The notes: generated by a model from the letters alone, not told the origin. A DNA stretch of 64,000 nt from Macrostomum lignano (GCA_002269645.1 NIVC01001966.1:124001-188000); one strand, 5' to 3'; shown: positions 1,078 to 57,403, numbered from the stretch's first letter. Program-made: numbers and translations.

Positions 1078-2333
1078 ATGTCGACTCCGAGGGCACTTCT
1101 TCTCGCCCTGCTGAGCCTCGCCTGCCTGCGCAGCCTGCAGTCCTGCCAGCCGCCCTACCAGCCCGTGTCCGGCTTCTGCCTGCTCGTGAACACCACAGCC
1201 GCAGTCGGCTGGTGCCAGGCAGCTCGTCTGTGCCAGCTAGGCCGTCGGAGGCGAGCTGGTGATGGAGCCGGCCGCCATCCGGGCAGCTGCGCAGTTCGCC
1301 ACGGGCTCGGTGATGCTGTGGGTCGGCGTCACCGACATGCTGGAGGAGCGGCTCACCAGCAGGTGAGGCAATCAGCATCGAGTATTTCAGCACAAAACAG
1401 ACTATTTCTCCTGCTAGTGAGCAAAGCAGACAAAGCTCACTAGCAGGTTGGAATAGCTCTAGAAATACGTTTCGTAAATTCGGTGCTGCTGGTAGTAATG
1501 ATTAAATTACTCATATACGAGCTACAAGAAAGACAGGCCCTGAATGAATGAATAATTAATTTATTAGCTTTTCTACTAACATTGCTCAGCCAGTTACCAG
1601 AGCCATTATTACCCTAACACACAACGGGGGAGAGCACAAACCAAAAGGCCACCCCTAACTAGCCAAAATTAGTTGGGTCACCAACCAGCCGCCAACAAGT
1701 GCAAAGAAGCATCCAAGTGCGCAATACACAACAAAAAAGAGTAAACTCCTGCTGTGCAGAGGAATCTGAAGGGCATTACTTGATGGGGCTTCACTCTAAA
1801 AGGCACAAAATTCACTAGCCAACTTCCCAACCTGATTTTAGGTATTTTCGTGGCTCGTGCTTCTTCGAGGTTTTTCATTTAACTGAAATTTCCACCTTCT
1901 CAGAAGCGGCTGGCGCATGACCAATGGAAGCGATTTTGTTGCCCCAAATTCTGACTGGAAATCTGGCAGCCCAGGCAATTTTGCCAACTCGGATGACATG
2001 CTGGGTCTAAAAAACGGTTTGCTTCTCGACTTGATCTCATCAAACCGGATCGGCTTCGTCTGCCAGCCCGTGGCGACGCCGAACAGCGGAACCTTCAGTC
2101 GGACCAGCTTCCTGCAGCTGGGCGACATCACGCCCTACTACTGCTACACGGAGGTGCAGTCGGTGCAGCCCAGGCTGCTCTGCGCTCGCCAGTGCGCTGC
2201 CCGCTGGGAGTGTCGGGCGGCTCTGTTCAACCGGGCCGAGTCTCGCTGCCGCATGCTGGACTTCGCCGACGCGAGCGCGGGCGACGCCATCGAGAAGAGC
2301 GGCGCTTGGGAGAAGTTCGTCAAGGTCTACTGA
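1078..2333 (+). pseudogene. C-type lectin + PAN/apple gene copy 1, frameshifted allele or pseudogene
   Basis: Exons 1078-1362 and 1904-2333 (GT-AG). Exon 1 is 285 nt versus 281 nt in intact copies because of an extra CTAG at 1237-1240 (tgccag-CTAG-gccgtc). Exon 2 is intact. Confidence 0.85.
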
Positions 2334-3147
2334 GGTTATCATTGAAAAAATAAGCCACTGGTTTTATTCATTTTCGCAAATCACAATCTCTATAGCAATT
2401 TAGAGGCCGAAACTTCATGAAGCAGAGCCTAGAAGGATAACTAGCGTCGTTGAACACCTCCTGTTTTTAGTGAACGCAGATGTTCTTCTGAGTTTACTGT
2501 TGGCGACTTCTCTCTTTAATCAGATTCTGAACACCTAACTCTAGATAATACTGTATGAGTAACATTTTGGTCAGTGAAAACTCTAAACATCTCTTTGGCA
2601 CCAAATACAACAATGAAGCATAGCTGCGCATGGCAAGACATGTGTTGCTATGACAACGAAAGGATATTGTTCTTCAAATTGGCAGGCTTGGTAGAACTAA
2701 ACCGGGTCTATGGACAGGTGCGAGCCCTCCCTCTTGAACTCATCGTCGTTCAATCTATTTATGTCAGTAAAGCGTTCGAACGAGTCAAGTGGAAGCTGAA
2801 ACCCCAAGATAAATTTACAGAATTGGAGTTCAAATGCATCAGCCAATGCAAACATGACAGCTCATCCAGCCAAAGAAGTATTTGTTCGACCGTTTGGTTC
2901 GGTAAACACTTGATGAGAGTATTGCGGCATCATCATTGTTGAATGCTAGCATAGGCGATCGATTCTGCGGTGACTCAAAAATTTCACCTTATCATTTGTA
3001 GCTTGATGAAGAATACGAGTATCTGAAAAAAATTTTTGGCACAAATTTTTTCTGTCGATTTGGAAAGGTTCATGGGTCAGTCTCTATGTCTATGTCTAAT
3101 GTCCCTAATTTAAACCTGATCTTTTGTGAAAGAAAAAGCAACGGAAA

Positions 3148-3248
3148 GATAGTGCACGGCTTGCAAGTGCAACAACGCCTAGGACCACGAGTGTGCGTAG
3201 CGCACGAGTGTCTATGGCGTTGTTGCACGCGCAAGCCGTGCTTCTATC
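3148..3248. repeat. Imperfect inverted repeat (hairpin) of about 100 bp, probably a Crypton-associated terminal structure
   Basis: gatagtgcacggcttgcaagtgcaacaacgcc ... ggcgttgttgcacgcgcaagccgtgcttctatc; the left arm recurs at about 50888. Confidence 0.75.
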
Positions 3249-3250
3249 AC

Positions 3251-9286: not shown

Positions 9287-9432
9287 AGCAGACGGTCCAA
9301 TGGCCAATGCAAACCAACGACAGTCTTCACTGACCAATCAGAGTCTGCCATGCTGCGAACAAGTTAAATAAAGCAATTTTCATGTGAATGATGAAGCCCG
9401 CACAGCTGAAATACTGCTGGTTTACCACAAGG
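9287..9432 (+). promoter_or_regulatory. Putative promoter/5'UTR of lectin copy 2 with a CCAAT box, shared with the split copy at 53027
   Basis: tgaccaatcagagtctgcca (CCAAT at 9334) ... atgatgaagccc.cagctg.aa..ctgctggtttacc is conserved at about 52881-53026. Confidence 0.5.
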
Positions 9433-10329
9433 ATGTCGACTCCAAGGGCGCTCCTTCTCGCCATGCTGAGCCTCGCCTGCCTGCGCAGCCTGCAGTCCTG
9501 CCAGCCGCCCTACCAGCCCGTGTCCGGCTTCTGCCTGCTCGTGAACACCACAGCCGCAGTCGGCTGGTGCCAGGCAGCTCGTCTGTGCCAGGCCGTCGGA
9601 GGCGAGCTGGTGATGGAGCCAGCCGCCATCCGGGCAGCTGCACCGTTCGCCAAGGGCTCGGTGATGCTGTGGGTCGGCGTCACCGACATGCTGGAGGAGC
9701 GGCGGACTAACAGGTGAGGCAAAAATAATCTAGTATCGATTATTTCTGCACACAGCAAATTTGATTGCATTTTGTGCTGAACGAAGAACTCTGAAAATCT
9801 CATCTGAATGCTCATTCATTAGCCTTTGATGAGTAAATATGCTAATTATGTAGATAATATTAGGAGGTCCTCACTGATCTGATATTCTCATCTTCTCAGG
9901 AGCGGCTGGCGCATGGCCAATGGAAGCGAATTTGTTGCCTCAAACTCTGACTGGGGATCTGGCTACCCAAACAACATCGACAACTCGGACGACCTGCTGG
10001 CTCTAACAAGAGGTCTCCTGGCCGACTTGATCTCATCAAACCTGATCGGCTTCGTCTGCCAGCCCGTGGCGACCCCGAACAGCGGAACCTTCCGTCGGAC
10101 CAGCTTCCTGCAGCTGGGCGACATCACGCCCTACTACTGCTACACGGAGGTGCAGTCGGTGCAGCGTAAGGTGTTCTGCTTTTGCCAGTGCGCTGCCCGC
10201 TGGGAGTGTCGGGCGGCTCTGTTCAACCGGGCCGAGTCTCGCTGCCGCATGCTGGACTTCGCCGACGCGAGCGCGGGCGACGCCATCGAGAAGAGCGGCG
10301 CTTGGGAGAAGTTCGTCAAGGTCTACTGA
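9433..10329 (+). CDS. Secreted C-type-lectin-like domain + PAN/apple domain protein, copy 2 (236 aa)
   Basis: Exons 9433-9713 (281 nt) and 9900-10329 (430 nt) join in frame. Signal peptide MSTPRALLLAMLSLACLRSLQS; CTLD hallmarks FCLLV..WCQAARLC..GGEL..LWVG..W..GxP..FVCQ; PAN-type C..C..C..C pattern CYT..C..QCAARWEC..FN....CRM. Confidence 0.85.
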
Positions 10330-11404: not shown

Positions 11405-12861
11405 TCAGTGTAGTTGAGAAAGCTCATGGATCCACCTAGATGTCGGTAGCAGAAACACCGCCAGCTTTACGAACCATTTGTGCGCTCGGCGACATGCGCT
11501 GTAAGGCTGGGCTGCGGCATCCATCCGATCCACACCTCCCATGTTCTGATTATATTGCAACACAGAGTTGGGCTTCAGCATCTGCTGCTCCACACCACCG
11601 CGCAGTACCCGGCTAAATAAAGAGCTAGCAGCTGTTGAAGAAGATTCCAACAGATAGACAGTCTTTGTTCCTGAGCTTCGCCTGTCAACCAGCTTCGCAG
11701 CGAGGATGTCACCATGTCGGGCAAAGACTCGGTGGTTGCAAGAGCATATCTCGCAGAATCGGTGGGACGCCTTGATCTTTGCGAACGGTCCCAGTTAAGG
11801 TTGTTCCTCTGGTCAGTAAGAACTTGGCCAGTCGCACTGATGAAAACCAACTGTCGCAAAAGACCCGATATCCAAGGTCCAGAATGTCGCAACAAAGTCT
11901 ACGATGACTCTCTCACTGACTGAGAGTTCATTCGCAATGGTGGATGAATGTGTCAGACAATTCCACATGTAGCCTGTAGAAGACTCTGCAAGGCAGTAAA
12001 ATTTGATTCCAAACTTGGCTCTCTTGTTGGGCATGTACTGCTTAAAAAGCAGCCTCCCTTTATGGAGGAGCAGCACTTCATCAACGGCAATGCTTTGACC
12101 CTTTGACCAGGCAGGTAGCTGTTCCTGCAAACTGTCCGGACAATGTCTTGGAACGGCCTGATCTTGCACAAGGGATCATCAGCGTCGAAGTCAAGACAGT
12201 CATAGCAACGCAGCCATGTCATGATTTGTTGAAACCGCGAGCGGGGGAGCATCTTCATGCTTTGAAAGTAGGGATGGAAGTAGAACGGGTCCGTGGACCA
12301 GTAAGCCGTCAGCTCCGGTTTCTGTACAACTCCAGTATGAAATATAACGCCGATCACCTTCTTCATCTCAGAAACAGTGCAGGGCTTCCACGTTCTGAGC
12401 CCGTAAGGTAGTTCAGCATCTCGGTGTTCTTTTTGAAACTTGGCAATATCCAGCTGTGCTCTCTTGTTTGTCCACACGCACATCTGAAGCAGAAAGTCAT
12501 CGGGTAAAAATTGCTCGAAAATGACTGTGCAGCCATCGTCAACATCAGCAGGTACAGAGAATCTCGGATTGACTTCGCTTGCCCCGAGGAACTCGGGAAG
12601 AGAATTAGCTCGAGCATCGGTCTCTGGAGTTACTGATCTCTAATCATCGTGCATCATTCCCTGATCGTCTTCCTCCGGTCCATCGTTGCCTGCTTGATCT
12701 TCGCCACCGTCCTCTCCCTCACTCTCAGCAGTGACCAATGATTCATCGCTCGACTCATCGCTCGATTCGCTGTCGAGGCCCAAATTTTGCAAGGCTAGCT
12801 TGGCTGCTTGTCGTTGCAGTCTGACCGCTTGCATTGTAAGGAGGCACGAGTAGAAACTCAT
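11405..12861 (-). mobile_element. Degenerate piggyBac (PGBD-type) transposase
   Basis: Acidic N-terminus, then VQKPELTAYWSTDP, DPLCKIRPF, IAVDEVLLLHKGRLLFKQYMPNKRAKFGIKFYCLAESSTGY and YNQNMGGVDRMD...RRAHKWFVKL; several frameshifts; TTAA ends not identified. Confidence 0.9.
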
Positions 12862-14960: not shown

Positions 14961-15916
14961 ATGTCGACTCCGAGGGTGCTCCTCCTCTCCCTGCTGAGCC
15001 TCGCCTGCCTGCGCAGCCTGCAGTCCTGCCAGCCGCCCTACCAGCCCGTGTCCGGCTTCTGCCTGCTCCTGAACACCACAGCCGCAGTCGGCTGGTGCCA
15101 GGCAGCTCGTCTGTGCCAGGCCGTCGGAGGCGAGCTGGTGATGGAGCCGGCCGCCATCCGGGCAGCTGCGCCGTTCACCACGGACTCGGTGAACTTGTGG
15201 GTCGGCGTCACCGACATGCTGGAGGAGCGGCTCACAAGCAGGTCGGAATTCCAGCAAAGTTCTAGAAAATGAATGCGTTGAAAACTGCCCATACTAATCA
15301 ATTAACAAAAGAATTGCAATTGCTATACCACTTCTTGTCGTGCACTGAATTCTGAAGGACGCAACTTGAACGAGAATTGAAAATAACGATCAGACAAACC
15401 GAAAACCAACTCTGCAAACTGATAATAAGCCTTCTAGTGGTTCGTCGTTCAATTTTCTCTTTTAACTGAAATTTCCATCTTCTCAGGAGCGGCTGGCGGA
15501 TGACCAATGGAAGCACATTTTTTGCCCCAAACTCTGACTGGAGACCCGGCTGGCCAAATAATGGCGACAGCTCGGATGACATGCTGGCTCTAAAAAAAGG
15601 TTTGCTTCTCGACTTTGTCTCATCCAATCTGGTAGGCTTCGTCTGCCAGCCCGTGGCGACGCCGAACAGCGGAACCTTCCGTCGGACCAGCTTCCTGCAG
15701 CTGGGCGACATCACGCCCTACTACTGCTACACGGAGGTGCAGTCGGTGCAGCGCAGGCTGCTCTGCGTTCGCCAGTGCGCTGCGCGCTGGGAGTGTCGGG
15801 CGGCTCTGTTCAACCGGGCCGAGTCTCGCTGCCGCATGCTGGACTTCGCCGACGCGAGCGCGGGCGACGCCATCGAGAAGAGCGGCGCTTGGGAGAAGTT
15901 CGTCAAGGTCTACTGA
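14961..15916 (+). CDS. Secreted C-type-lectin-like + PAN/apple protein, copy 3 (236 aa)
   Basis: Exons 14961-15241 and 15487-15916 join in frame; the donor GTCGGA is weaker than in other copies; same domain pattern as copy 2. Confidence 0.82.
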
Positions 15917-33869: not shown

Positions 33870-34696
33870 AAAATCCATTTAGAATCGCTTCTAAATTCAA
33901 TTTAGAATCGCCACTACAATCCATTTAGAATCGCCCCTACATTCCATTTAGAATCGCCCCTGCATTCCATTTAGAATCGCCCCTACATTCAATTTATAAT
34001 CGCCGCTACAATCCATTTAGAATCTCCCCTAGATTCCATTTAGAATCTCCCCTCTCTTCAATTTAGAATCGCCCCTCTCTTCAATTTAGAATCGCCCCTC
34101 TCTTTAATTTAGAATCGCCCTCTCTTCAATTTAGAATCGCCCCTCTCTTCAATTTAGAATCGCCCCTCTCTTCAATTTAGAATCGCCCCTCTCTTCAATT
34201 TAGAATCGCCCCTCTCTTCAATTTAGAATCGCCCCTCTCTTCAATTTAGAATCGCCACTGCATTCAATTTAGAATCGCCCCTGCATTCAATTTAGAATCG
34301 CCCCTAGGTTCAATTTAGAATCGCCCTTAGATTCAATTTAGAATCGCCCCTGCATTTCATTTAGAATCGCCCCTAGATTCCATTTAGAATCGCCCCTGCA
34401 TTCCATTTAGAATCGCCACTGCATTCAATTTAGAATCGCCCCTGCATTCAATTTAGAATCGCCCCTAGGTTCAATTTAGAATCGCCCTTAGATTCAATTT
34501 AGAATCGCCCCTGCATTCAATTTAGAATCGCCCCTAGGTTCAATTTAGAATCGCCCTTAGATTCAATTTAGAATCGCCCCTGCATTCAATTTAGAATCGC
34601 CCCTGCATTCAATTTAGAATCGCCCCTGCATTCCATTTAGAATCGCCCCTGCATTTCATTTAGAATCGCCTCTGCATTCCATTTAGAATCGCCCAA
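33870..34696. repeat. Minisatellite, 23-bp unit, upstream of FCHO
   Basis: (gaatcgcccctgcattcaattta)n. Confidence 0.95.
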
Positions 34697-34805
34697 AAAT
34701 CTTTAATAACTTGAGCAAACGCAAAAATTCTACTATAAGTAGAACATCGCACATTAATAATAAAATTCGCCGGCCTTCATGCCGACCCAGCGGCACCGTT
34801 AGAGC

Positions 34806-35338
34806 ATGTCGCGCAGCGGCAGCACGGTCGCCGGCGGCCTATTTGTGGCCAATTATTGGGGCGAGAAGCACAACGGCTTCGATGCTTTGTATTCGAATTT
34901 CAATGCCCAGAGCTGCCAGGCCACCGCCGAGCTGCTGGCATTTATGCGCGACTATCAGCAGCTGGAGGATGCGCACCACAAAGGCCTGGTGAAGCTCAGC
35001 AGGAAGCTGGCCTCCTCCAAGTCTCTGACTGGCGGCACCGGCAGCTTCACGCCCTGCTGGGACGTCCTCCTGGCTGCTGTGGACCAGATGGCCACGGCCT
35101 ACTCTGACCTGGCCTCCAACAGCCAGACCCTGCTGCGGGACATTCAGAAGCACAGCGAGGAGCAGCAGCGGGCGACTAAAGGATTCAAGGACAGCGAGCA
35201 CCAGCGGACCATGAATAACTGCGCCGCTGCCAAGACCTGCTTCGGCATGGTGCAGAGCAAGAGGCAGGCCTGCCAGACCCGGCATGCTGAGGCTAGAAAG
35301 GTCAGCTGTCTGTCTGCCTGTCTGTCAGGTCTGTCTGT

Positions 35339-35399
<61 letters not shown>

Positions 35400-35544
35400 T
35401 GTCTGTCTGTCTGCCTGCCTTTCCGTCTGTCTGTCTGTCTGTCTGCCTGTCCGTCCGTCTGCCTGTCTGTCTATCAGGTCCGCCTGTCTGTCTGTCAGGT
35501 CTATCTATCTATCAGGTCTGTCTGTCTGTCTGTCTGTCTATCAG

Positions 35545-35580
<36 letters not shown>

Positions 35581-38500: not shown

Positions 38501-41500
38501 GCGCCGCCTTTGGTGGCTCTCAGCAGCAGCAGCAGAAAGATCAGGAGCAGCAGCCACCGCCAATGCCTTCCATGCCGCCGCCGCTTCCGCCGCCTTCGGA
38601 GCAGCCAAATGCCTCCTCATCTTCGCCGCCGTCGCAGCCTCAACCTTCGCTTCCACCGCCGCCGCCTCCATCGGGTTCGGCGCCGTCGCCGGCTTCGCCA
38701 GCGCGTCCGCTGGACCATCGGGGCGACCGGGAGGCTGCGCCACTCAACGCTCTCCTGACTGAGACCATCCACTGCCGCTGGTCCGGCGAGCAGTGCAAGT
38801 TCCGGGTGCAGGGCAGCCTGACCCTGTCCTTCCCGGCTACTCAGCTGCTGTCCAGACTGTCGCAGCCGCTGCCCGGTTTGCTGTTTCGCCTGTGCGACAC
38901 CGGCCTGCTTGGCCAGCACAGGTCATCCAGCCGGCTTGTTAAAGAGTGAGAGACTGGCTAGCTTTGTCGTGAAGTCTTGATATCATTATCTTGCTCATTA
39001 GCTCGTGAACTCTCACGTTGACAGGCTTCGACTCACCCACGAAGTCACGTTTGAAGTCACTCATACCGTGGAGTCACTTACTGATGCGGTCACTTACTCA
39101 TGGAGTCCCTCACTCATTGGAGTCATTCACTGATGAAGTCATTCACCGAAGAAATCACTCACTCATAAAGTCATTAACTCATAAAGTCATTCACCGATGA
39201 AATCACTCACTCATAAAGTCATTCACCGATGAAATCACTCACTCATAAAGTCATTCACTCATGAAGTCACTCACTAATATAGTCACACACTCATGAAGTC
39301 ATTCACTGATGAAGTCAGTCACCGATGAAATCACTCACTCATAAAGTCATTCACCGATGAAATCACTCACTCATAAAGTCATTCACCGATGAAATCACTC
39401 ACTCATAAAGTCATTCACTCATGAAGTCACTCACTAATATAGTCACACACTCATGAAGTCATTCACTGATGAAGTCAGTCACCGATGAAATCACTCACTC
39501 ATAAAGTCATTCACTCATGAAGTCACTCACTGATATAGTCACACACTCATAAATTCATTCACTCATGAAGTCATTCACTCATGAAGTCAGTCACCGATGA
39601 AATCACTCACTCATAAATTCACTCAACTCATAAAGTCATTAACTCATAGTCACTCACTCATAAAGTCATTCACTCAAGAAGTCGCTTACTAATAAATTCT
39701 CATAGTCATTCACTGATGTAATCACTCTCTGATAAAGTCACACACTCAAAGTCATTCACCGATGAAATCACTCACTCATAAAGTCATTCACCGATGAAAT
39801 CACTCACTCATAAAGTCACACACTCATAAATTCATTCACTCATGAAGTCATTCACTGATGAAGTCATTCACCGATGAAATCACTCACTCATAAATTCACT
39901 CAACTCATAAAGTCATTAACTCATAGTCACTCACTCATAGTCATTTACTCATGAAGTACTTCACTGATGAAATCACTCACTTAAAAATCACTCACGCGCT
40001 CCGTGGCGCTCCACCTCAGGGAGTTCCCCGAGTCCAACGGTCTCCAGCTCACCATAGACCCGGCCGCCCTCGCCGACGAGCTGAAACGGCTGGCCAGAGA
40101 GCGGCCCGGCATCCAGTTCCTGAGCATGGAGGTGCTCACTTACGATCTGCAGTTGCCAATAGTCACACCAGGGCCCGTGTTTATCCGGGCCTGCTGGAAC
40201 TGCGAACAGGAGCATACGGACCTGCGGGTGGAGATTAGCAGGCACCCAACATCGTCTCTGCTTGTCGGGAAAGTGTCCGTTTCCGTGAGTTATCTACTCG
40301 AAAATTTCGGTGTTACAATTTAAGACCAAGTCTAAAATAGAGTAAAGTCAAATTTGTACAAAGTTAAATTTGTAGGCTCGTGACCTTTCTTGATCTTTTT
40401 ACGATCATGACCTCAATGAATGAACTTTGTGTGGTTACGAACTCAGTGAATCTACTTTTTAGGGTCATGGTCTTAGTAGGTCTTATTTATAAGTTCATGA
40501 CCTTATTGAGTCTACTTTGTAGGATCATGACCTCTATTAATGGGTTTTGTAGGGTCACGACCTCAATTAATGGATTTTGTAGGGTCATGACCTCTGTTAA
40601 TGGGTTTTTTAGGGTCATGACCTCTATTAATGGGTTTTTTAGGGTCATGACCTCAATTAATGGGTTTTATTGGGTCATGACCTCTATTAATGGGTTTTGT
40701 AGGGTCATGACCTCTATTAATGGGTTTTGTAGGGTCATGACCTCTATTAATGGGTTTTGTAGGGTCATGACCTCTATTAATGGGTTTTATTGGGTCATGA
40801 CCTCTATTAATGGGTTTTGTAGGGTCATGACCTCTATTAATGGGTTTTGTAGGGTCATGACCTCTATTAATGGGTTTTGTAGGGTCATGACCTCAATTAA
40901 TAGATTTTTCAGGGTCATGACCTCTATTAATGGGTTTTATTGGGTCATGACCTCTATTAATGGGTTTTGTAGGGTCATGACCTCAATTAATGGGTTTTAT
41001 TGGGTCATGACCTCAATTAATGGGTTTTATTGGGTCATGACCTCTATTAATGGGTTTTGTAGGGTCATGACCTCAGTTAATGAGTTTTTTAGGGCCATGG
41101 CCTCTATTAATGGGTTTTTTAGGGTCATGACCTCAATTAATGGGTTTTATTGGGTCATGACCTCTATTAATGGGTTTTTTAGGGTCATGACCTCAATTAA
41201 TGGGTTTTATTGGGTCATGACCTCTATTAATGGGTTTTGTAGGGTCATGACCTCTATTAATGGGTTTTGTAGGGTCATGACCTCTATTAATGGGTTTTGT
41301 AGGGTCATGACCTCTATTAATGGGTTTTATTGGGTCATGACCTCTATTAATGGGTTTTATTGGGTCATGACCTCTATTAATGGGTTTTGTAGGGTCATGA
41401 CCTCAGTTAATGAGTTTTTTAGGGTCATGACCTCTATTAATGGGTTTTGTAGGGTCATGACCTCAATTAATGGGTTTCGTAGGGTCATGACCTCAAAGAA

Positions 41501-42159
41501 TCAACTTGGTAAGGTCATGACCTCAAAGAATCAACTTGGTAAGGTCAATGACCTCAAAGAATCAACTTGGTAAGGTCAATGACCTCAATGAATCAACCTG
41601 GTAAGGTCAATGACCTCAATGAATCAACCTGGTAAGGTCATGACCTCAATGAATCAACCTGGTAAGGTCATGACCTCAATGAATCAGCTTAGTAAGGTTA
41701 TGACATCAATAAATGGATTTTTTATAGTCGTGACGTCACTGAGTCTAATTTACAGGGTCATAACCTAAACAAGCGTACATAAGGTGTCAGGACCATGATC
41801 ATAAATGCACAATGTCCCCTCTGAACAAATGAAACGACCGCCAGGCCGAGGTCTCTGGCGGCGTCCTTGACATGCAGTCCCTGCCGGCCGGTCGCTGGCT
41901 GTCGGACACCCGCCTAGCCATCTGGGAGGTGGCTGTCCCGGCCAATCCGGCCGACAAGACGGTGGTGAAAGCGAAATTCCTGCTGGGCTCCGGGCCTACG
42001 GTGCCCAGCCCAGTCCGGGTGCAGTTCATGCTGGACAACAGCAGCTTCTCAGACTGCAGCTTCGCCCTGATCGGTGCCAACTACAGGCTGGATGTCAATA
42101 AGCGCAGGATCATCAGCGGCCAGTACAGCGCTGAGCCTAGCGCAGTGGCACCCCTGTGA
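34806..42159 (+). CDS. FCHO: FCH domain-only protein (F-BAR plus mu-homology domain endocytic pioneer), about 925 aa
   Basis: Exons 34806-35300, 36074-36809, 37367-37596, 38185-38921, 40020-40284 and 41845-42159; phases join. F-BAR start FVANYWGEKHNGFDALYSN..MRDYQQLEDAH; linker PRVDAEGFTIRDD; muHD LNALLTETIHCRW..FRVQGSLTLSFP and MQSLPAGRW..KAKF..VRVQF..RIISGQY. Confidence 0.92.
35304..35660. repeat. Tetranucleotide microsatellite (TCTG/GCCT) in FCHO intron 1
   Basis: ctgcctgc and tctgtctg runs directly after the donor at 35301. Confidence 0.95.
37712..38166. repeat. Minisatellite, 26-bp unit, in FCHO intron 3
   Basis: (gtgataaatcgggagtgacggtgaga)n. Confidence 0.95.
39010..39995. repeat. Complex minisatellite (about 32-bp unit with sub-repeats) in FCHO intron 4
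   Basis: tcattcaccgatgaaatcactcactcataaag and variants. Confidence 0.9.
40463..41710. repeat. Minisatellite, 30-bp unit, in FCHO intron 5
   Basis: (ggtcatgacctctattaatgggttttgtag)n. Confidence 0.95.
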
Positions 42160-47222: not shown

Positions 47223-48176
47223 CGAGGGGCATTCAAAAAGTTTTGGCAACAGGCAACTAAAATCTAGTGGAAGCTTATTATTCTAAAAGTAAGGGTTTAC
47301 AGTCCTTCTATGTAGTCTCCGCCGCGCTCTATGCACTTCTGATGCCTCCGTATCCACGAATCAAAGGCGCCACGGTACTCCGATTCAGTGAATGCCCTCA
47401 ACTCTGAATTGATAGCGCGGGCCAGGTCTTGCGGCCTCTGAAATCGGCGCCCAGCCAGCCTCTCCGTCAATTTCGGGAAGGCCCAGAAGTCGCACGGAGC
47501 TAAGTCCGATGTGACGATGTCAGAGAGGCGCTTGGTGCCGCCAGAACCAAAGCAGCGCAAGAACTCCTGACTGCAGCGAACCCGCTCCTGGCGCTGCTCC
47601 TCAGTGAGCTGATGCGGCACCCAACGAGCTGTGATTTTTCTGAGACCCAGCTGATCATGCAGGATGGTGAAAACGCTGCTATCAGATATGCCAAGTGTCT
47701 GGCTCAGTATGGCAACAGAAATGTTTGGGTCCTCAGCCACCAGCGATTGCACAGCGTCAATGTTGCTCTTGGTCACGGCTGTGCTCGGCCTCCCAGATCG
47801 AGGGTTGTCACTGAGGCTGCTCCTGCCGGCGCCAAAAGCCTCAATCCATTGCGCAACAGTTCTATAAGATGGAGCTTGATCCCCTATCACCTGTGCTAAG
47901 TCGGCATGAATTTTGGTGGCGTTTTCTCCAAGTTGTACGCGCATGAAGATGTAGAAGCGCGCATTTTCTGAGCTGATATTTTCCATATTATGTCAGAAGC
48001 TGAAACTTAGTTATGGTTAGCTGTGAATTGTGCAATAACGGGTGAAGCTATTGAGCTGAAAGTTTATACGTTGGTATCAGGCATGTTACTAAAGACATTC
48101 CTAAAATTTAGTGCATTTTGCTTGAGCCAAAGTATATCTGCATATGCAGTTGCCAAAACTTTTTGAATGCCCCTCG
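47223..48176 (-). mobile_element. Mariner element (954 bp) with in-frame deleted transposase ORF 47297-47986
   Basis: Perfect 28-bp TIR cgaggggcattcaaaaagttttggcaac and TA TSD; HTH regions, PRSGRP and WVPHQL intact; IVT is joined directly to SDLAPCDF. Confidence 0.95.
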
Positions 48177-48634: not shown

Positions 48635-48677
48635 ATTGGCTGAGAACATGGAAGGTGAAATCCCAGATGCTATAAAA
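48635..48677 (+). promoter_or_regulatory. Putative core promoter of lectin copy 4 (reverse CCAAT plus TATA box)
   Basis: ATTGG at 48635-48639 and TATAAAA at 48671-48677, about 56 bp before the ATG. Confidence 0.5.
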
Positions 48678-48732
48678 TGGCTGTAGCAGTCGCCTCCTCC
48701 TGCTCAGCAAGTTCTCCGAATCTGAAGCAAGG

Positions 48733-49621
48733 ATGTCGACTCTGAGGGCGCTCCTCCTCTCTCTGCTGAGCCTCGCCTGCCTGCGCAGCCTGCAGTCCTG
48801 CCAGCCGCCCTACCAGTCCGTGTCCGGCTTCTGCCTGCTCGTGAACACCACAGCCGCAGTCGGCTGGTGCCAGGCGGCTCGTCTGTGCCAGGCCGTCGGA
48901 GGCGAGCTGGTGATGGAGCCGGCCGCCATCCGGGCAGCTGCGCAGTTCGCCACGGGCTCGGTGATGCTGTGGGTCGGCGTCACCGACATGCTGGAGGAGC
49001 GGCTCACCAGCAGGTGAGGCAATCAGCATCTAGTATTTCTGCACACAGCAAATTTGATGCCACCTTTTGCTAAACAAAGAACTTCAAAAATCTCATCCGA
49101 TGCTCATTAATTAGCCTTCGATAAGTACAGATGCTGATTATCTAGATAATATCAGGAGGGTCTCACTGAACTGCTATTTTCATCTTCTCAGGAGCGGCTG
49201 GCGCATGGCAAATGGAAGCGAGTTTGTTGCCCCAAACTCGGACTGGGCAATTGGCTGCCCAAACAACATAGACAGCTCGGATGACCTGCTGGCGCTATTG
49301 AGTGGTGCTCTGTGCGACTTGCGGGAATTTTTCCAAGTCGGCTTCGTCTGCCAGCCCGTGGCGACGCCGAACAGCGGAACCTTCCGTCGGACCAGCTTCC
49401 TGCAGCTGGGCGACATCACGCCCTACTACTGCTACACGGAGGTGCAGTCGGTGCAGCGCAGGCTGCTCTGCGTTCGCCAGTGCGCTGCCCGCTGGGAGTG
49501 TCGGGCGGCTCTGTTCAACCGGGCCGAGTCTCGCTGCCGCATGCTGGACTTCGCCGACGCAAGCGCGGGCGACGCCATCGAGAAGAGCGGCGCTTGGGAG
49601 AAGTTCGTCAAGGTCTACTGA
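48733..49621 (+). CDS. Secreted C-type-lectin-like + PAN/apple protein, copy 4 (236 aa)
   Basis: Exons 48733-49013 and 49192-49621 join in frame. Confidence 0.85.
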
Positions 49622-50882
49622 GATGAACCCACTGATCAAGAATAGTTGAGCAAATAGCAAAAAACTTATTTTACACCAACTAAACACAAACTCTAGTCTC
49701 TCTGGTGACTCTCTTTCTGGCCAGGGAAAAGTTTGATGCTTGGATGGAAGCATATACGTAGCACCTGTGTGGCAGGTAAGAAAGTTATTGGTAAAAGGCA
49801 AAATCAGTGCAAATGCAAATTGACTGACACAGAATAAATACAACGTAAGCGTTAAAGACCCGCATTGTTGATAGCACGTGTTTGGAACTGATGAAGTTTA
49901 CAAAATTCTTGGAGCACTGCAGGTCAGGAAACTATGCTTGCGAGCGAAGAGAAGAAAGTCAGAACTGAGTTTACTTCAGTTCATTACCGCTCATTTGAAG
50001 GACATCTTGGCTGTTTACATGTAGGTTCTTTTGTTGTAGAAAAACTTGAGAGTCCATGCAGCTCAAGTCTCTTGAAAGCGTGGTGTGCTGTTTCCACTCT
50101 CACTAAGAGACTCAAGACAATCAATGGAGACGCCTTCCGCTGTTGTCTTGAAGAGAAACAAAGAGAAAGTAGAATGAAAAACGAAGTTGATGGGGTCAAG
50201 AAGCTGCTTGAGCAAATCCGCCACCTTTTCATTGGTGTCCTTGAGCTGAGTTTTCTTCTTTTTCAACTGCCACTGTGCTGTCTCGCTACTCGACGACTAC
50301 CATCAAGGAGCGCATGAGTTTGCTGCGCGACACGTGATCCTGCGTAGCTGAGTCAGTGCTGGAGTGCTTCTCTAGGCAGGGACTTCTTTTTGCGATGAAG
50401 TAAAACAGCAGATGAAGCTGGCAAACAAACAAGTTTCTATCTTTTCCATGATGTGCGCTCGTATTTGGATTTTTCATTCACTTTCAAAATGCAGCACCGC
50501 ATGTACGAATTCGGACAGATTCTGTCCGAACTAGAGAGCTGCGCCATGGACAACTGAGGTGGTATCGAATAGAAGGACTCCCGTACTCTCGATTCTCTTT
50601 GAAATAAGAAACAGGATTTTCTCGACAAAATTTGTCTATGGCGAAACCCCGTTCTCGAGAGCATACAAAATGGCTGCTGGCCGCTCAACAGTTTTATTTA
50701 TTTTGGTCGTAAGCGGCTGAGGACGCGTAAATACACGCGTCTGAAGACGATTACGACCATAGATAAGTCAAACAAGTGGGGATTGATGTATTTATTACTC
50801 AGTTCGTGTCAAGCAAGAGGAAAGTTAAGATAAAATCCTGCAACGTACTTACCAACGACTTATCCAACCAAAAAGCCACAAT

Positions 50883-52424: not shown

Positions 52425-52505
52425 ATGTCGATTGACGACTCCGACGGCGTTCCTCCTCTTATTTGCTGACATCACCGACATGCTGCAGGAGCGGCTCACT
52501 AGCAG
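52425..52505 (+). pseudogene. Collapsed remnant of lectin exon 1
   Basis: atgtcga..gactccga..gcgttcctcctct fused to tcaccgacatgctgcaggagcggctcactagcag|gt, about 200 bp of exon 1 missing. Confidence 0.7.
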
Positions 52506-53667
52506 GTTTGTTCAGAACTTAAAATCATAATCGAGCTGATATATCAATCATATTTCCAGTCTGAAGCGCTGAGCTTAATGTATCAACAATTGTGGTTTGT
52601 TAGACAATTATAGAGACATTCTGTTTCTCGTAGTGCCGACGGTTCACGCCCACGATCGTATTGCTTGGCTAATCCCTAAATAAGTCATCAGAAATCGGGA
52701 AACCTAAATAATTTTTTACAGTTTTAAAAAATTAGAACTATAGATTTACAGTGCAATGCCATGTGGCATTAACTGTAATGGCGATTTGAACACGAAATAT
52801 TCTTTTATTAAAAACTGCTCAAATTGACTCAAAATTGTAAAAAAGCTAATTCGAATCCAAGAGTATGTGCTACTCGTAAGCAGCAGACGGTCCATTTGCC
52901 CATGCACCTGAGCAACATGACCAATCAGAGTCTGCCAAGCTGCGAGAGGTTAAACACCGGTATATAGCAATTTCCATGCGAATGATGAAGCCCGTACAGC
53001 TGGAAAGCTGCTGGTTTACCGCAGGGATGTCGACTGCAAGGGCGCTCATCCTCTCCCTGCTGAGCCTCGCCTGCCTGCGCAGCCTGCAGTCCTGCCAGCC
53101 GCCCTACCAGTCCGTGTCCGGCTTCTGCCTGCTCGTGAACACCACAGCCGCAGTCGGCTGGTGCCAGGCAGCTCGTCTGTGCTCACGCGTAATATGCACG
53201 TGACTGACACTCGTGAAACACGTTTTGTGTCCCTTCTTTACGCGAATATACGCGTGTAAGAATACGCACAGAATACACGAGTGAGTTACGCGCTCAAAAA
53301 GCGCGCTTTACACACATTTAACATGAATAATACGCGCAATAAACGGATAGAAAGTTGTCGGGGCAGCGCTGACAGCGCAGACAACAGGAGCCTCGTCGAT
53401 AGAGTAGGACCCGGGATTAGGCCAGAATTACTCGTAGGAGACCTTCTCCGTACTCGATTCAGTGGTTTCTTGACCAGTTCTTTCATATTTCCTATCTGCC
53501 GCGTATCACAGGACGGAGTGATTAAATCCAAAACAGGAAAAGTGACAGAGGAGTGCCAGAAAGCACAAACATATAGAATTCGCCTGGCTAAATTCATACT
53601 ACGAGTATGAGTCTTATAAGCTCAGGTCTTCGTCAAAAAAGGTCCTCACAGCCCTCAGTATACTCAG

Positions 53668-53792
53668 TATGGCGCCCCTGTATTGTATAATATGGCCCCT
53701 GTAGTGTATAATATGGCACCCCTGTAGTGTATAATATGGCGCCCCTGTGGTGTATAATATGGCGCCCCTGTAGTGTATAATATGGCGCCCCA
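53668..53792. repeat. Tandem repeat, 23-bp unit, about 5 copies
   Basis: (ggcgcccctgtagtgtataatat)n. Confidence 0.9.
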
Positions 53793-54489
53793 CTCTTGTG
53801 GTTAAAATACGCCCCCCCTCATTTTTTTATTTCTAAATCCGCCTCTGGCGAACAGTGTTTTAAATTAATAGAAAAAACAATAGCCATTCAGAAGTCTACT
53901 TACAGAGAGGGTATAGAAAACGCACGATACTCGTAGATGTATGTCAGCCTGAAATTCAGTGAATTTATAAGCCCTTTAACAGACAGCTGCTGTAACGGCT
54001 TCCGCTGCCTGGATTTCCTGGTATTTTCAGAATGAATCTAAATAACAGACCGTAGATCGTTGCTCAGCGTCACATGAGAAGAGACAGATCTGCTTCTTTT
54101 ATCGTATACCAATCAATCGTCATGGAATGTTTTCCTTACATCTCTGCTTCCATTGCTGCTTTTGTGTGCTAGAATTTACTGTATTGATTGAAAAGCATTG
54201 TAAAACACGGATAATGGGTATGAAAAAACAACTGAATTTTTAGGTTTAGGGTTGGGGGTTGAACCAAAAATTAGAATGGCCCTGTCGAACATAAAAGACT
54301 CATTGGGGAATTGCTAAGATGTTAAGGATTACAGGGGCTGCTGAGAATCCAAGGGTCAATTGGAAGTTGTTGGTGGGCCAAGCCAAAGTAGATCAAAGCG
54401 AGAGTTAGGGTTAAACCATTGCTTAAAGGGAGGCTTTAATGCCAAAGCTCACAGCTTGGGGATGTGACAGATTTTATCAATTCCGTGTC

Positions 54490-54870
54490 ATGCCATTTAA
54501 TGCTAAAAATGCGCCTGCAAACAGTTAAACGTCTCATGGACATGGTGTTGCGCGGACCTAAATGGGAAGCCTGTCTTGTATATGTAGATGACATTGTAGT
54601 CATGGGCAGGTCATTACAAGAGCATAATAAGAACCTTGAAAAAGTCCTAAAACGTCTTAAAGAGGCTAATCTTTGTTTAAAGCCCAGTAAATGTCTCCTT
54701 GCCTTGAAATCCCGGCCATAAATATACTAAGCTATAAAATACTCCAGATGGTATTGCAGTCGACGAAGAGAAGGTACAAGTGATTACTACTTGGCCTCGA
54801 CCAGGAACTGTGAAAGAGGTGCAAAGTTTGCTAGGGCTTGAATCTTACCATCGCAAATTAATACAAAACT
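54490..54870 (+). mobile_element. Ty3/Gypsy reverse-transcriptase fragment
   Basis: MDMVLRG..CLVYVDDIVVMGRSLQEHNKNLEKVLKRLKEANLCLKPSKC, then GIAVDEEKVQVITTWPRPGTVKEVQSLLGL. Confidence 0.88.
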
Positions 54871-56519
54871 TTTCCTCATTAGCCGAAATGTAATTTCGAG
54901 TTTTTGGAAAATATGAATTAATGCGTATTTTACCAACCCAATTCATTATTTGTTTTTGACTCAAATATTGCAATATTGTCACACAGCTTTGATGTCCTGA
55001 AATGTAATGAAATGAAATGAAATGAAAAAACTTGATAAACTTGATAAACCTCCAAATAATTACGCTCGTATTAAACATTACTGATATCCATCGAAGTACA
55101 GTGTAAGTTACGCCAAATTCTATAAGTATCACATTGACTGAATATTTCTATGATTCTACTGTAAGTAGCATCATAGTTATTTCGATACTGTTACTTTAGT
55201 TGGTACTTTGTTACTGCATGTGGACGTACGTACGTCTTACATAAGACAGCTCATATGTTCCTTTTGCAACGATCCCTTGTGAATTCGTTATTCCCGGGGT
55301 ATCCGCTTATAAGCGCCTCTGCCCACCCACCTTTTCGGTTGTGTGTAATTGTGAGCGCCTCTTGAGCTGATATACGAAGAATTTCAAGTGGGTTTCCCGA
55401 GTACCTGTGTATTTTGTGGTTGATACATGTGTTAAGCATGTTTTGTAGTAGAAAAATTATCGTTGTTTGTAATCCTGATGAGTATTTTTTTAGTTGGAGA
55501 GTAAAGTATTTTTGTACTGTATAGCGTCTAGTGTAATCTAGTCAACAATGAGGTCAATGCGTTTTCGTAGTAATGATGTTACAGTGTGGTTTGTTAAAGG
55601 CATGTATCATATCGTATTTCATTATTTCGCGCGCATAACCGTACTACTTGTAATCATTCATTCATTTTAACAATATTCTATATGTAATGCGCTTATGCTC
55701 CTTTTGTATTTGTGGATATTTGTCGCCTCGCATGTATTTATTATATTATTTATATTTTATGCACAACGCCATTACACGCGTAATTCGTACTGCGTCAGAG
55801 ACTCGGAGGCGAGCTAGCTGGTGATGGAGCCGACCGCCATCCGGGGAAGCTGCGCTGTTCGCCATGGTGAACCTGTGGGTCGGCGATACCGACATGTTGG
55901 ACAAGCGACTCACCGGCAGGTATGGCTTTTAACGTCAACAGTAGGATTTTAATTACAACTGTTATTGTAAACTTTTTGCAAACATTATTAGGGAGTATCA
56001 ACACAATCCAGCGATCTGTTTTTAGAAAAAAACTTTCGCTGTTCGATAAATTTAGAACAAGGATGACATGCTGGCTCTACAAAGTGGTCTCGAGCACCGC
56101 AGGCAGGATGAGCGACGTCTGGGCAGGGCAGGCAGAGAAGTGGAGGAGAGCGTTGCAGGAGATGGAGTCCTCACGTGACGCTTCACTCAATTTTCACTCA
56201 AAAATCTGACCCACTGGCAGAATTGTTGAATATCTCAACTGTCCGGAAAACTGACGACTTGATTCTTGTTTAATAAGGTTTGCAACGAGACCAAGGAACA
56301 CAGCAATATAGTAAGTTAGATTCTGCCGAATTCTATGAGCGTTGTGCTATATCAGCCAATCAGGATGAGCGATACGGGTGACAATGAGGAAAGTGTTTCT
56401 AAGCCGAATTCAATTGGACATTGGGGTTTCCAATGGAATTTGGATTTAAACAGAAGCCCGATACGCTTTCAAGGCTGCAGAGTCTCCTGAAGTTTTTAAT
56501 AACATTTAACTCTGAAGTG

Positions 56520-57403
56520 ATGTCGACACCAAGGGTGCTCCTTCTCGCCCTGCTGAGCCTCGCCTGCCTGCGCAGCCTGCAGTCCTGCCAGCCGCCCTAC
56601 CAGCCCGTGTCCGGCTTCTGCCTGCTCGTGAACACCACAGCCGCAGTCGGCTGGTGCCAGGCAGCTCGTCTGTGCCAGGCCGTCGGAGGCGAGCTGGTGA
56701 TGGAGCCGGCCGCCATCCGGGCAGCTGCGCAGTTCGCCACGTACTCGTGGCTCTGGGTCGGCGTCACCGACATGCTGGAGGAGCGGCTCACCAGCAGGTG
56801 AGGCAATCAGCATCGAGTATCTAGTGTTTCTATCTTAAAGCTAATTTGGTGCTACTTTTGCGGAATAAAAAACTCTGAAAATCTCATCTGAATGCTCATT
56901 CATTAGTCTTCAATGCGTAAAGATGACTATAGCTTAAATTATAATAGCTGATCTGATATTCTCATCTTCTCAGGAGCGGCTGGCGCATGACCAATGGAAG
57001 CGAATTTGTTGCCCCAGACTCTTACTGGAGATCTGGCTGGCCAGATAATGGAGGCAGCTCGGATGACATGCTGGGTCTAATCAATGGTCTGCTTTACGAC
57101 TTTGTCTCATCAAACGCCATCGGCTTCGTCTGCCAGCCCGTGGCGACGCCGAACAGCGGAACCTTCCGTCGGACCAGCTTCCTGCAGCTGGGCGACATCA
57201 CGCCCTACTACTGCTACACGGAGGTGCAGTCGGTGCAGCGCAGGCTGCTCTGCGTTCGCCAGTGCGCTGCCCGCTGGGAGTGTCGGGCGGCTCTGTTCAA
57301 CCGGGCCGAGTCTCGCTGCCGCATGCTGGACTTCGCCGACGCGAGCGCGGGCGACGCCATCGAGAAGAGCGGCGCTTGGGAGAAGTTCGTCAAGGTCTAC
57401 TGA
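56520..57403 (+). CDS. Secreted C-type-lectin-like + PAN/apple protein, copy 5 (235 aa)
   Basis: Exons 56520-56797 (278 nt, one codon shorter: ATYSWLW) and 56974-57403 join in frame. Confidence 0.85.

What the first reader, a model, noticed from the sequence alone, without database searches (positions are those of the whole stretch)
1078..57403. Secreted lectin-PAN family with a hypervariable recognition face on a constant scaffold: candidate diversified recognition system
Seen: five full-length copies share almost identical signal peptide, N-terminal CTLD and PAN domain. The first 45 codons of the exon-2 ORF (1917-2051, 9913-10047, 15500-15634, 49205-49339, 56987-57121) differ by whole-codon swaps with no indels. 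Examples: codon 15 K/G/R/A/R, 18 S/Y/W/C/W, 22 F/I/G/I/G, 32 K/T/K/L/I, 33 N/R/K/S/N, 37 L/A/L/C/Y, 44 R/L/L/Q/A. These sit between invariant W14, G17, P19, N21, SDD, L29, L31, G34, D38 and GFVCQ. Established: this part of the C-type lectin fold (long loop and beta3-beta4) is the ligand-binding surface, and invertebrate immune or allorecognition families often show variable binding sites on constant frames. Inference: a variable-head, constant-PAN-tail secreted receptor family under diversifying selection (immunity, mucus/adhesion or sperm/mate recognition). I cannot tell whether it has been described.
Basis: partly seen in the sequence, partly recalled or inferred. Interest (0 to 1): 0.85.

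Follow-up and report, generated by a model that had tools for sequence, protein, structure and literature searches.

The report
Flatworm lectin-PAN genes, variable binding patch
A flatworm (Macrostomum lignano) gene cluster encodes small secreted lectin-like proteins that gene conversion keeps almost identical, except for a roughly 45-codon patch on the predicted ligand-binding face; this is an undescribed example of a familiar way of building a panel of recognition proteins.

Summary
The window is from Macrostomum lignano (assembly Mlig_3_7). It holds five two-exon copies of a 236-aa secreted protein (signal peptide, C-type-lectin-like domain, PAN/apple domain) plus a dead exon-1 fragment. 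Copy 1 is frameshifted.

Amino-acid variation is concentrated in codons 100-143: 26 of 44 codons vary, against 20 of 192 elsewhere (p = 3e-11), with no indels. A confident AlphaFold model and sequence matches to Mincle place the patch on the long loop and the beta3-beta4 hairpin. The most variable residues sit where canonical lectins have the EPN Glu and the WND Asn.

Region-wide dN/dS is below 1 (about 0.7), and synonymous divergence is about 11-fold higher in the patch than in the PAN part. Flanks are unalignable and introns diverged. Constant exons have very high GC3 and conflicting site patterns, and half of the dead exon fragment is still identical to the live copies. So the constant scaffold is best explained by gene conversion among old paralogs.

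A site model gives nominal support for positive selection on about a quarter of patch codons (omega about 3.5, p about 0.02).

The canonical Ca2+/sugar ligands are absent. Ligand, tissue and function are unknown. I rate it a new member of a known kind, of moderate interest.

The parts
1078..1362 (+). Copy c1, exon 1 (signal peptide + N-terminal half of the CTLD). A 4-bp insertion at 1237-1240 shifts the frame, so this is a probable pseudogene.
   Evidence: Alignment; translation; tblastn split at 1236/1241.
1904..2333 (+). Copy c1, exon 2 (rest of the CTLD + PAN domain + stop). The variable patch, codons 100-143, is at 1920-2051.
9433..9713 (+). Copy c2, exon 1.
9900..10329 (+). Copy c2, exon 2. 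Variable patch at 9916-10047. There is an extra cluster of changes at codons 183-189, including a new Cys189.
14961..15241 (+). Copy c3, exon 1.
15487..15916 (+). Copy c3, exon 2. Variable patch at 15503-15634.
48733..49013 (+). Copy c4, exon 1.
49192..49621 (+). Copy c4, exon 2. Variable patch at 49208-49339. This is the only copy with Cys at both 116 and 135.
56520..56797 (+). Copy c5, exon 1 (one codon shorter than the others).
56974..57403 (+). Copy c5, exon 2. Variable patch at 56990-57121.
53027..53182 (+). Dead sixth copy: 5' half of exon 1 (codons 1-52). It is 93-96% identical to the live copies, and its last 111 nt are identical to c2, while its upstream flank is only about 78% identical to that of c2.
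55803..55921 (+). Dead sixth copy: 3' half of exon 1 (codons ~55-94). It has decayed to about 80% identity with frameshifts. A 2.6-kb insertion carrying a reverse-transcriptase ORF (54464-54721) separates it from the 5' half.
52444..52506 (+). Short further remnant of the 3' end of exon 1.

Best explanation

The paralogs are old. Their flanks and most introns no longer align. Recurrent gene conversion keeps the coding scaffold (exon 1 and the PAN half of exon 2) 94-99.6% identical, synonymous sites included. A roughly 45-codon patch at the start of exon 2 escapes this homogenisation and has diverged at about the neutral synonymous rate. Inside the patch, structural residues stay fixed (W112, G115, P117, N119, S123-D124-D125, L127, L129, G132, L134, D136). 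About a quarter of the codons, including 116, 120, 130, 133, 135 and 142, change faster than neutral.

The patch forms the long loop and the beta3-beta4 hairpin, which is the canonical CTLD ligand face. Each paralog therefore most likely presents a different binding specificity on a common scaffold, with the constant PAN domain as a shared partner-binding or anchoring module. Because the canonical Ca2+/sugar ligands are replaced, the ligands may not be ordinary sugars.

Shown: gene structure, fold, location of the variability, dS heterogeneity, and the signatures of conversion.
Inferred: selection for diversity, distinct ligands, secretion, and the biological role. My best guess for the role is extracellular or mucosal recognition of microbes or other foreign surfaces; reproductive recognition is second.
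For: Organism: the arrestin-domain ORF in the window lies on NCBI GCA_002269645.1 contig NIVC01001966.1. That accession is M. lignano Mlig_3_7.

Gene models: five copies with the same GT..AG phase-2 intron.

Fold: the AF2 model built on a 50-sequence alignment has pLDDT 91.8 and pTM 0.86. The Foldseek top hits are all CTLDs (Endo180 CRD2, Mincle, SIGN-R1, DC-SIGN) at E about 3e-7 and target-normalised TM-score 0.7-0.79. Across relatives, Lectin_C matches 37 of 50 and PAN_1 31 of 50. About 50 relatives of roughly 240 aa share the architecture.

Patch location: DSSP gives beta3 at 126-130 and beta4 at 133-137. 'WAIGCPNNI' aligns to Mincle 'WDVGEPNNI'. Variable and invariant residues alternate along beta3 and beta4.

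Old paralogs with a converted scaffold:
- Identity by segment: flanks about 42% (random level), introns 50-84%, patch 69-83%, exon 1 94-97%, PAN part 96.5-99.6%.
- Homology starts 1-2 nt before the ATG and ends at the stop codon in nearly all pairs.
- pS is 0.285 in the patch against 0.025 in the PAN part and 0.061 in exon 1.
- GC3 is 0.85-0.91 in the constant parts, 0.53-0.69 in the patch and 0.67-0.82 in neighbouring genes; introns have GC 0.34-0.42.
- The 20 informative sites give 7 different splits, and 88 of 190 site pairs are incompatible.
- In the dead exon-1 fragment, one half is still 100% identical over 111 nt while its flank is about 78% and its other half about 80%.

Selection in the patch: M0 omega is 0.69. 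M2a puts 24-27% of codons at omega 3.4-3.7 and 43-44% at omega about 0.05. The LRT is 7.5-8.0 on three topologies, p about 0.02. In a parametric bootstrap under M1a, 1 of 88 replicates reached the observed value.

Precedent for reading dS heterogeneity as regional gene conversion that spares the specificity-determining part: clustered protocadherins (PMC4978886).
Against: - Mean dN/dS in the patch is below 1.
- The site test rests on five sequences and 49 codons. Recombination, which is evident here, can inflate such tests.
- A short intron lying between two homogenised exons has not been homogenised. This requires short conversion tracts or separate conversion of each exon.
- There are no expression data. 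The four intact products and two of the exon-2 ORFs are absent from the protein collection by exact look-up, and none of the genes is among the called genes of the region fetched around c3.
- No further close paralogs could be retrieved.
- Function is entirely inferred.
Confidence: 0.6

Rival explanations
1. There is no adaptive diversification. The patch is a tolerant surface loop region evolving under relaxed constraint, and it looks hypervariable only because gene conversion erases divergence everywhere else in the coding sequence.
For: Pairwise and M0 dN/dS are 0.69-0.83, i.e. below 1. dS in the patch is as high as intron divergence. The sample is small and reticulate, which makes the M2a result fragile.
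Against: M2a fits better than M1a (p about 0.02; bootstrap 1 of 88). 43-44% of patch codons are under strong constraint (omega about 0.05), interleaved with the fast ones. There is no indel or stop in the patch in any copy despite 17-31% nucleotide divergence. The fastest sites are the positions equivalent to canonical ligand-contact residues (116, 135).
Confidence: 0.24
2. The constant exon parts are kept identical by selection on the nucleotide sequence itself (overlapping reading frame, RNA structure or extreme codon preference), not by gene conversion.
For: Long ORFs exist in other frames and on the antisense strand of the GC-rich constant parts, for example 49295-49843 (-) and 49302-49649 (+). 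The homology is limited almost exactly to the coding sequence.
Against: A truncated, non-functional exon-1 fragment is still 100% identical over 111 nt, while its flank and its other half have diverged. Informative sites in the constant parts conflict with each other, as expected for exchange between copies. In distant relatives the PAN domain is as divergent as the CTLD, with 26% mean column identity. GC-rich sequence gives long spurious ORFs in any frame.
Confidence: 0.06
3. A targeted mutational process (a hypermutation hotspot or a templated diversification mechanism) acts on the patch of recently duplicated genes.
For: Both synonymous and non-synonymous changes are elevated in a sharply bounded 130-150-nt segment. 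The C-type-lectin fold is the scaffold used by bacterial diversity-generating retroelements (own knowledge).
Against: Flanks and introns are even more diverged than the patch, so the genes are not young. There is no extra template-like copy of the patch in the window. The reverse-transcriptase ORFs present belong to ordinary retrotransposon fragments. Two near-identical (719/720) copies of a related M. lignano paralog are identical through their patch.
Confidence: 0.03

Closest known systems
Clustered protocadherin variable exons (vertebrates)
   Same: Tandem paralogs in which gene conversion homogenises part of the coding sequence (low dS), while the specificity-determining part escapes conversion and diversifies. 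dS heterogeneity is used as the read-out (PMC4978886).
   Different: Different fold and biology: these are membrane cadherins for neuronal self-recognition, with variable exons spliced to shared constant exons. Here each gene is a complete small secreted protein. The dS contrast is also larger here (about 11-fold, against 2-5-fold in mouse and frog).
Canonical Ca2+-dependent C-type lectin CRDs (Mincle, MBP-A, DC-SIGN)
   Same: Same fold. There is a WIGL-like strand (WVGV), the outer disulfide, and a near-gapless correspondence of the EPN...WND segment, one residue shorter here than in MBP-A. The variable patch covers the same loop and hairpin that bind Ca2+ and sugar in these proteins.
   Different: The inner disulfide is absent. 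The Glu of EPN is S/Y/W/C/W and the Asn of WND is L/A/L/C/Y, so canonical Ca2+-site-2 sugar binding is not expected. A PAN domain is fused at the C-terminus.
Diversified invertebrate recognition families (sea-urchin 185/333, snail FREPs and CREPs, bivalve C1q-domain proteins)
   Same: Clustered, secreted, lineage-specific families with a conserved leader and scaffold and a diverse recognition part. Recombination or conversion among members is reported for 185/333 (PMC1988830, seen).
   Different: Those families have shown immune induction and, for FREPs, reported somatic diversification. None of this is known here. The domain composition (CTLD + PAN) is different, and the diversity here is point substitution without indels or element mosaics.
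Snake-venom C-type lectin-like proteins and NK-cell lectin-like receptors (Ly49/KLR); own knowledge, not tested here
   Same: CTLDs that have lost Ca2+/sugar binding, bind proteins, and evolve rapidly in tandem arrays with positive selection on the binding surface.
   Different: These are vertebrate dimeric or membrane proteins with no PAN domain. Scaffold homogenisation with such sharp boundaries is not their hallmark.
Variable proteins of bacterial and phage diversity-generating retroelements (Mtd, TvpA); own knowledge
   Same: A C-type-lectin fold that displays a small set of hypervariable residues on a rigid constant scaffold.
   Different: That variability is made by a reverse transcriptase copying a template repeat with adenine-specific errors. 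No template repeat or dedicated RT is present here, and the variation is between germline paralogs.

Membership tests
[quoted passage not shown] | CTLD fold (two helices, beta-sheets, long loop region, beta3-beta4 hairpin) | tested here: met
   AF2 model pLDDT 91.8. All 50 listed Foldseek PDB hits are CTLDs, E 3e-7 to 7e-6, target-normalised TM-score mostly 0.6-0.79 against single-domain CRD chains.
[quoted passage not shown] | Match to Pfam Lectin_C above the gathering score | tested here: inconclusive
   Window copies are sub-threshold: c2 scores 18.1 bits against a cut-off of 22.6, and c4 has no hit. However, 37 of 50 aligned relatives match, best E 4.6e-15. PDB sequence hits to Mincle and others have E 0.01-0.07.
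[quoted passage not shown] | Conserved cysteines: outer pair (alpha1 to beta5) and inner pair (beta3 to the loop after beta4) | tested here: not met
   The outer pair is present (C52, C147), as is the long-form N-terminal pair (C23, C34). The inner pair is absent in the window copies and in P0002-P0004 (SDD[ML]L and L-x-D in place of DC...D..C), although most distant relatives keep it. Pairings are inferred from position, not from coordinates.
Ca2+-dependent carbohydrate-recognition domains (true C-type lectins) | EPN or QPD motif plus WND motif supplying the Ca2+-site-2 and sugar ligands | tested here: not met
   The EPN position reads SPG/YPN/WPN/CPN/WPD and the WND position reads LLD/LAD/LLD/LCD/LYD. 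Only the Asp residues (D124, D136) are kept.
PAN/apple domain | Match to Pfam PAN_1 and the conserved cysteine core | tested here: inconclusive
   PAN_1 scores 21.2 bits against a cut-off of 21.4 for c4. 31 of 50 relatives match, best E 4.8e-7. C174, C187, C191, C197 and C209 are invariant or nearly so across 50 sequences. The PAN part of the model was not searched on its own.
Gene families with regional gene conversion that spares the specificity region (protocadherin-type pattern) | Strong dS heterogeneity along the coding sequence, raised GC3 in converted parts, conflicting phylogenetic signal | tested here: met
   pS is 0.025-0.061 in the scaffold against 0.285 in the patch. GC3 is 0.85-0.91 against 0.53-0.69. 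There are 7 splits among 20 informative sites. A PHI-like test was not significant (p = 0.09). The dead fragment is half-homogenised.
Inducible or somatically diversified invertebrate immune repertoires (185/333, FREP type) | Immune-induced expression; diversity beyond the germline gene set | not testable with these tools
   No expression or individual-level sequence data could be reached. Literature searches found no description of this family.
Diversity-generating retroelement targets | Template repeat plus cognate reverse transcriptase next to the variable region | tested here: not met
   blastn of a whole gene against the window finds only the gene copies and exon-1 fragments. The RT ORFs are retrotransposon fragments. 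The organism is a eukaryote.

The most novel reading that the evidence does not exclude
The cluster is part of a larger germline 'cassette' repertoire. Conversion keeps a universal scaffold, and patch variants are shuffled between paralogs, or are highly polymorphic or somatically varied between individuals. This would give Macrostomum an individual-specific recognition system for immunity or for mate and sperm discrimination in an outcrossing hermaphrodite. It would be built on a CTLD that binds non-sugar ligands without the canonical Ca2+ site.
Probability: 0.12. Interest if true: 0.8.

Novelty: new member of a known kind. Interest (0 to 1): 0.5.

Why it matters
Flatworm extracellular recognition and immunity are poorly known at the molecular level. 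Macrostomum lignano has transgenesis available (PMC5730564) and is used for gene knockdown (PMC12732829).

This locus offers a compact, clear natural experiment. The same genes show scaffold homogenisation by gene conversion next to a sharply bounded patch that diversifies, and a dead fragment serves as an internal control.

If the paralogs prove to bind different targets, the family would be a tractable model for how binding repertoires are built and maintained without somatic rearrangement. It would also provide a naturally pre-diversified small CTLD scaffold.

The genes also appear to be missing from the gene calls held for this assembly. That is worth fixing in the annotation.

Tried and rejected
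- Word-index protein searches with one copy and with the exon-2 alignment found nothing. Only the exhaustive HMMER scan found relatives.
- Exact look-ups of the spliced products and the exon-2 ORFs were negative. The spliced protein could not be used for a contig look-up.
- Two metagenome scans for close relatives found none, so a site-model test on many paralogs was impossible.
- The first AF2 run, with only the five paralogs, was useless (pLDDT 29).
- A PHI-like recombination test on 20 informative sites was not significant (p = 0.09). The case for reticulation rests on the number of conflicting splits and on the dead fragment.
- cDNA-mediated conversion was considered because homology stops at the coding-sequence ends. 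I set it aside because the 5'UTR downstream of the putative CCAAT and TATA boxes is not homogenised, the intron is retained in all copies, and c1-c4 similarity runs about 30 nt into the intron.
- Assembly artefact or collapsed haplotypes were rejected, because all copies lie on one contig with unrelated flanks.
- A DGR-like mechanism and a mutational hotspot were rejected (see the rival explanations).
- Literature searches for a described CTLD-PAN family in Macrostomum or other flatworms found only the unrelated adhesive protein Mlig-ap1 and a CLECT-like gene, Mlig-tuf2.


Full report
**Source and setting.** The window is eukaryotic. An intronless arrestin-domain ORF (17660-19114, minus strand) is found with 100% identity on NCBI assembly GCA_002269645.1, contig NIVC01001966.1. 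That accession is the Macrostomum lignano Mlig_3_7 genome. From the coordinates, the window corresponds to bases 124001-188000 of that contig. A related lectin-PAN sequence (P0003) is a UniRef entry of M. lignano, which fits this assignment.

**Checking the observation.** A DNA alignment of the five loci, together with motif and blastn searches, shows five two-exon genes on the plus strand:
- c1: 1078-1362 / 1904-2333
- c2: 9433-9713 / 9900-10329
- c3: 14961-15241 / 15487-15916
- c4: 48733-49013 / 49192-49621
- c5: 56520-56797 / 56974-57403

Each has a GT..AG phase-2 intron of 173-242 nt (541 nt in c1). The spliced product is 236 aa (235 in c5). Copy c1 carries a 4-bp insertion at 1237-1240 that breaks the frame, so four copies are intact. 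A sixth copy survives only as exon-1 pieces: 53027-53182, 55803-55921 and 52444-52506. Amino-acid variation is strongly clustered: 26 of 44 codons between 100 and 143 vary, against 20 of 192 elsewhere (Fisher p = 3e-11). There is no indel in the 148-nt segment in any pair. Two minor variable spots lie at codons 71-78 and 183-189.

**What the protein is.**
- Single-sequence Pfam matches are marginal: PAN_1 at 21.2 bits against a 21.4 cut-off, and Lectin_C at 18.1 against 22.6 for c2 only. PDB sequence matches to Mincle, DEC-205 and others are weak (E 0.01-0.07).
- An exhaustive HMMER scan with the five-copy profile found 169 proteins at E <= 1e-3. About 50 of them are roughly 240 aa long and match end to end.
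- In a 50-sequence alignment of these, 37 match Lectin_C and 31 match PAN_1.
- With that alignment AlphaFold2 gives a confident model (pLDDT 91.8, pTM 0.86). Its best PDB matches are all C-type lectin-like domains, at E about 3e-7 and target-normalised TM-score 0.7-0.79.

So the architecture is signal peptide, CTLD, PAN/apple. The signal peptide is inferred from the hydrophobic N-terminus. The three closest relatives are P0002 and P0004 (from JGI environmental contigs) and P0003 (M. lignano). Like the window copies, they lack the inner CTLD disulfide that most distant members keep.

**Where the variable patch sits.**
- In the model, beta3 is 126-130, beta4 is 133-137 and beta5 is 143-149.
- The HMMER alignment to Mincle pairs 'WAIGCPNNI' with 'WDVGEPNNI'. 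Residues 116-118 therefore occupy the EPN position.
- By near-gapless correspondence (one residue shorter here) with the canonical EPNN...EDC...WND segment of mannose-binding protein (my own knowledge of that sequence), 134-136 occupy the WND position.
- The most variable codons are 116 (S/Y/W/C/W, the Glu of EPN) and 135 (L/A/L/C/Y, the Asn of WND), together with 113, 120, 130, 131 and 142.
- Along beta3 and beta4, invariant hydrophobic residues (L127, L129, L134) alternate with variable ones (128, 130, 133, 135, 137). This fits one buried and one exposed face.

However, the canonical Ca2+ and sugar ligands are not kept, so ordinary Ca2+-dependent sugar binding is not expected. Copy c4 alone has Cys at both 116 and 135. 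In canonical CTLDs these two positions hold the same Ca2+ ion, which suggests a disulfide in its place (inference).

**How the pattern arose.** Nei-Gojobori estimates give mean pS and pN as follows:

| Region | pS | pN |
|---|---|---|
| Signal peptide | 0.146 | 0.043 |
| Rest of exon 1 | 0.061 | 0.035 |
| 49 variable codons | 0.285 | 0.207 |
| PAN part | 0.025 | 0.015 |

The ratio for the 49 variable codons is 0.72, and 0.83 for the core 33 codons. Synonymous divergence is thus about 11 times higher in the patch than in the adjoining PAN part of the same exon. The 'constant scaffold' cannot be explained by protein-level constraint alone.

The genes are not young:
- 300-nt flanks are at random-level identity (about 42%). 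Introns are 50-84% identical and fall into two lineages, {c1, c3} and {c2, c4, c5} (the lineages are visible).
- With 2.5-kb flanks, detectable homology begins 1-2 nt before the ATG and ends at the stop codon in nearly every pair.

A hotspot acting on recent duplicates is therefore excluded. It is the constant exons that are anomalously similar.

Several signatures point to gene conversion:
- GC3 is 0.85-0.91 in the constant parts, 0.53-0.69 in the patch and 0.67-0.82 in neighbouring genes, as expected from GC-biased conversion.
- The 20 parsimony-informative sites define 7 different splits of five sequences, and 88 of 190 site pairs are incompatible.
- Identity drops at the 5' edge of the homologous block.
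- The dead sixth copy is the most telling. Its 5' exon-1 half is 93-96% identical to the live copies, with its last 111 nt identical to c2, while its own upstream flank is only about 78% identical to that of c2. Its 3' half, separated by a 2.6-kb retroelement-bearing insertion, has decayed to about 80% with frameshifts. A non-functional fragment cannot be kept identical by selection on its product.

The same reasoning, low dS marking converted segments with the specificity region escaping, is standard for clustered protocadherins (PMC4978886).

**Is the patch under positive selection?** I wrote a Goldman-Yang type codon likelihood (F3x4, five taxa, all 15 topologies) and applied it to the 49 variable codons.
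- M0 gives omega 0.69.
- M2a puts 43-44% of codons at omega about 0.05 and 24-27% at omega 3.4-3.7.
- The M1a/M2a LRT is 7.5-8.0 on the three best topologies (chi-square p about 0.02). The high-posterior sites are 130, 133, 135 and 142 on all three topologies, plus 116 and 120 on two of the three.
- A parametric bootstrap under M1a gave a 95th percentile of 4.64, and 1 of 88 replicates reached the observed value.

This is nominal support, limited by five sequences and by recombination.

**Function.** Nothing here shows expression or ligand. By exact look-up, the four intact products and two of the exon-2 ORFs are absent from the protein collection. None of the genes is among the called genes of the 21-kb region fetched around c3. 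The relative P0002 lies uninterrupted, with no intron at the corresponding junction, on a 1.15-kb environmental contig. That could be a transcript or an intronless gene. Two copies of P0003 in M. lignano that differ at 1 of 720 residues are identical through their patch. Literature searches found no description of a CTLD-PAN family in Macrostomum or other flatworms. They found only the large adhesive protein Mlig-ap1 with a CTLD, and an unrelated CLECT-like gene.

My working model is a germline panel of secreted recognition proteins with paralog-specific binding faces and a shared PAN module. Extracellular or mucosal recognition is the most likely role, and reproductive recognition is second.

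**Comparison and novelty.** In principle this is a familiar kind of system: a tandem lectin-like family with a diversified binding site and a scaffold under concerted evolution. The evolutionary mechanics match clustered protocadherins. The protein logic matches rapidly evolving non-sugar CTLDs (snake-venom lectin-like proteins, NK receptors) and invertebrate repertoires such as 185/333 or FREPs. It is not a canonical C-type lectin, because EPN/WND and the inner disulfide are missing, and it is not a DGR-type system.

What is new is the family itself: CTLD + PAN, roughly 240 aa, apparently unannotated and undescribed. Also new is the unusually clean, sharply bounded pattern with an internal pseudogene control. 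I rate it a new member of a known kind, with moderate interest.

Noticed in passing
window 1237-1240 and 1363-1903: Copy c1 has a 4-bp frameshifting insertion in exon 1, and its intron is three times longer than the others (541 nt). It is probably a pseudogene, yet it remains 95-99% identical to the live copies in the constant parts.
   Followed up: partly
window 52444-55921: A dead sixth copy consists of exon-1 halves split by a 2.6-kb insertion carrying a reverse-transcriptase ORF (YVDD motif, 54464-54721). The 5' half is still near-identical to live copies, and the 3' half has decayed to about 80%.
   Followed up: yes
window 49256-49258 and 49313-49315 (c4 codons 116 and 135): Only c4 has cysteines at both positions, which in canonical C-type lectins hold the same Ca2+ ion. 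This is a possible extra disulfide replacing the metal site, and an example of two hypervariable sites changing together.
   Followed up: no
window 10165-10185 (c2 codons 183-189); also c1 2169-2189: There is a second small variable spot in the predicted PAN helix: RKVFCFC in c2 and PRLLCAR in c1, against RRLLCVR in the others. The c2 version gives an odd extra cysteine.
   Followed up: no
about 50-170 nt upstream of each ATG (e.g. 9332-9341, 52919-52928, 48640-48690): Each copy has a CCAAT or ATTGG box and a TATA-like box upstream, in otherwise unalignable promoters. c1 and c3 share a short promoter block, and c2 and the dead copy share about 160 nt at about 78% identity.
   Followed up: partly
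window 17660-19114 (-), 30635-30937 (+), 34806-42159 (+): Three unrelated genes separate the two lectin sub-clusters: an intronless arrestin-domain gene, an ELM2/SANT-like exon, and an FCH/F-BAR-domain gene.
   Followed up: partly
window 29955-41714: There is a dense run of minisatellite arrays (periods 22/44/66, 23, 45, 23, 4, 26, 16/64, 30/60/90; up to 980 bp each) in the introns and intergenic DNA of the middle region. These produce the long repetitive pseudo-ORFs in the ORF list.
   Followed up: partly
window 11405-12483 (-), 24919-25416 (-), 47297-47986 (-), 61968-62573 (+): Transposon remnants are present: a piggyBac-type transposase, a MULE transposase, a mariner/Mos1-type transposase, and a retroelement RNase H fragment.
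   Followed up: partly
P0003 / P0152 (M. lignano UniRef entries): A related lectin-PAN unit is embedded at residues 461-672 of a 720-aa predicted 'guanylate cyclase'. This is most likely a merged gene model, with a lectin gene nested in or next to the cyclase gene.
   Followed up: no
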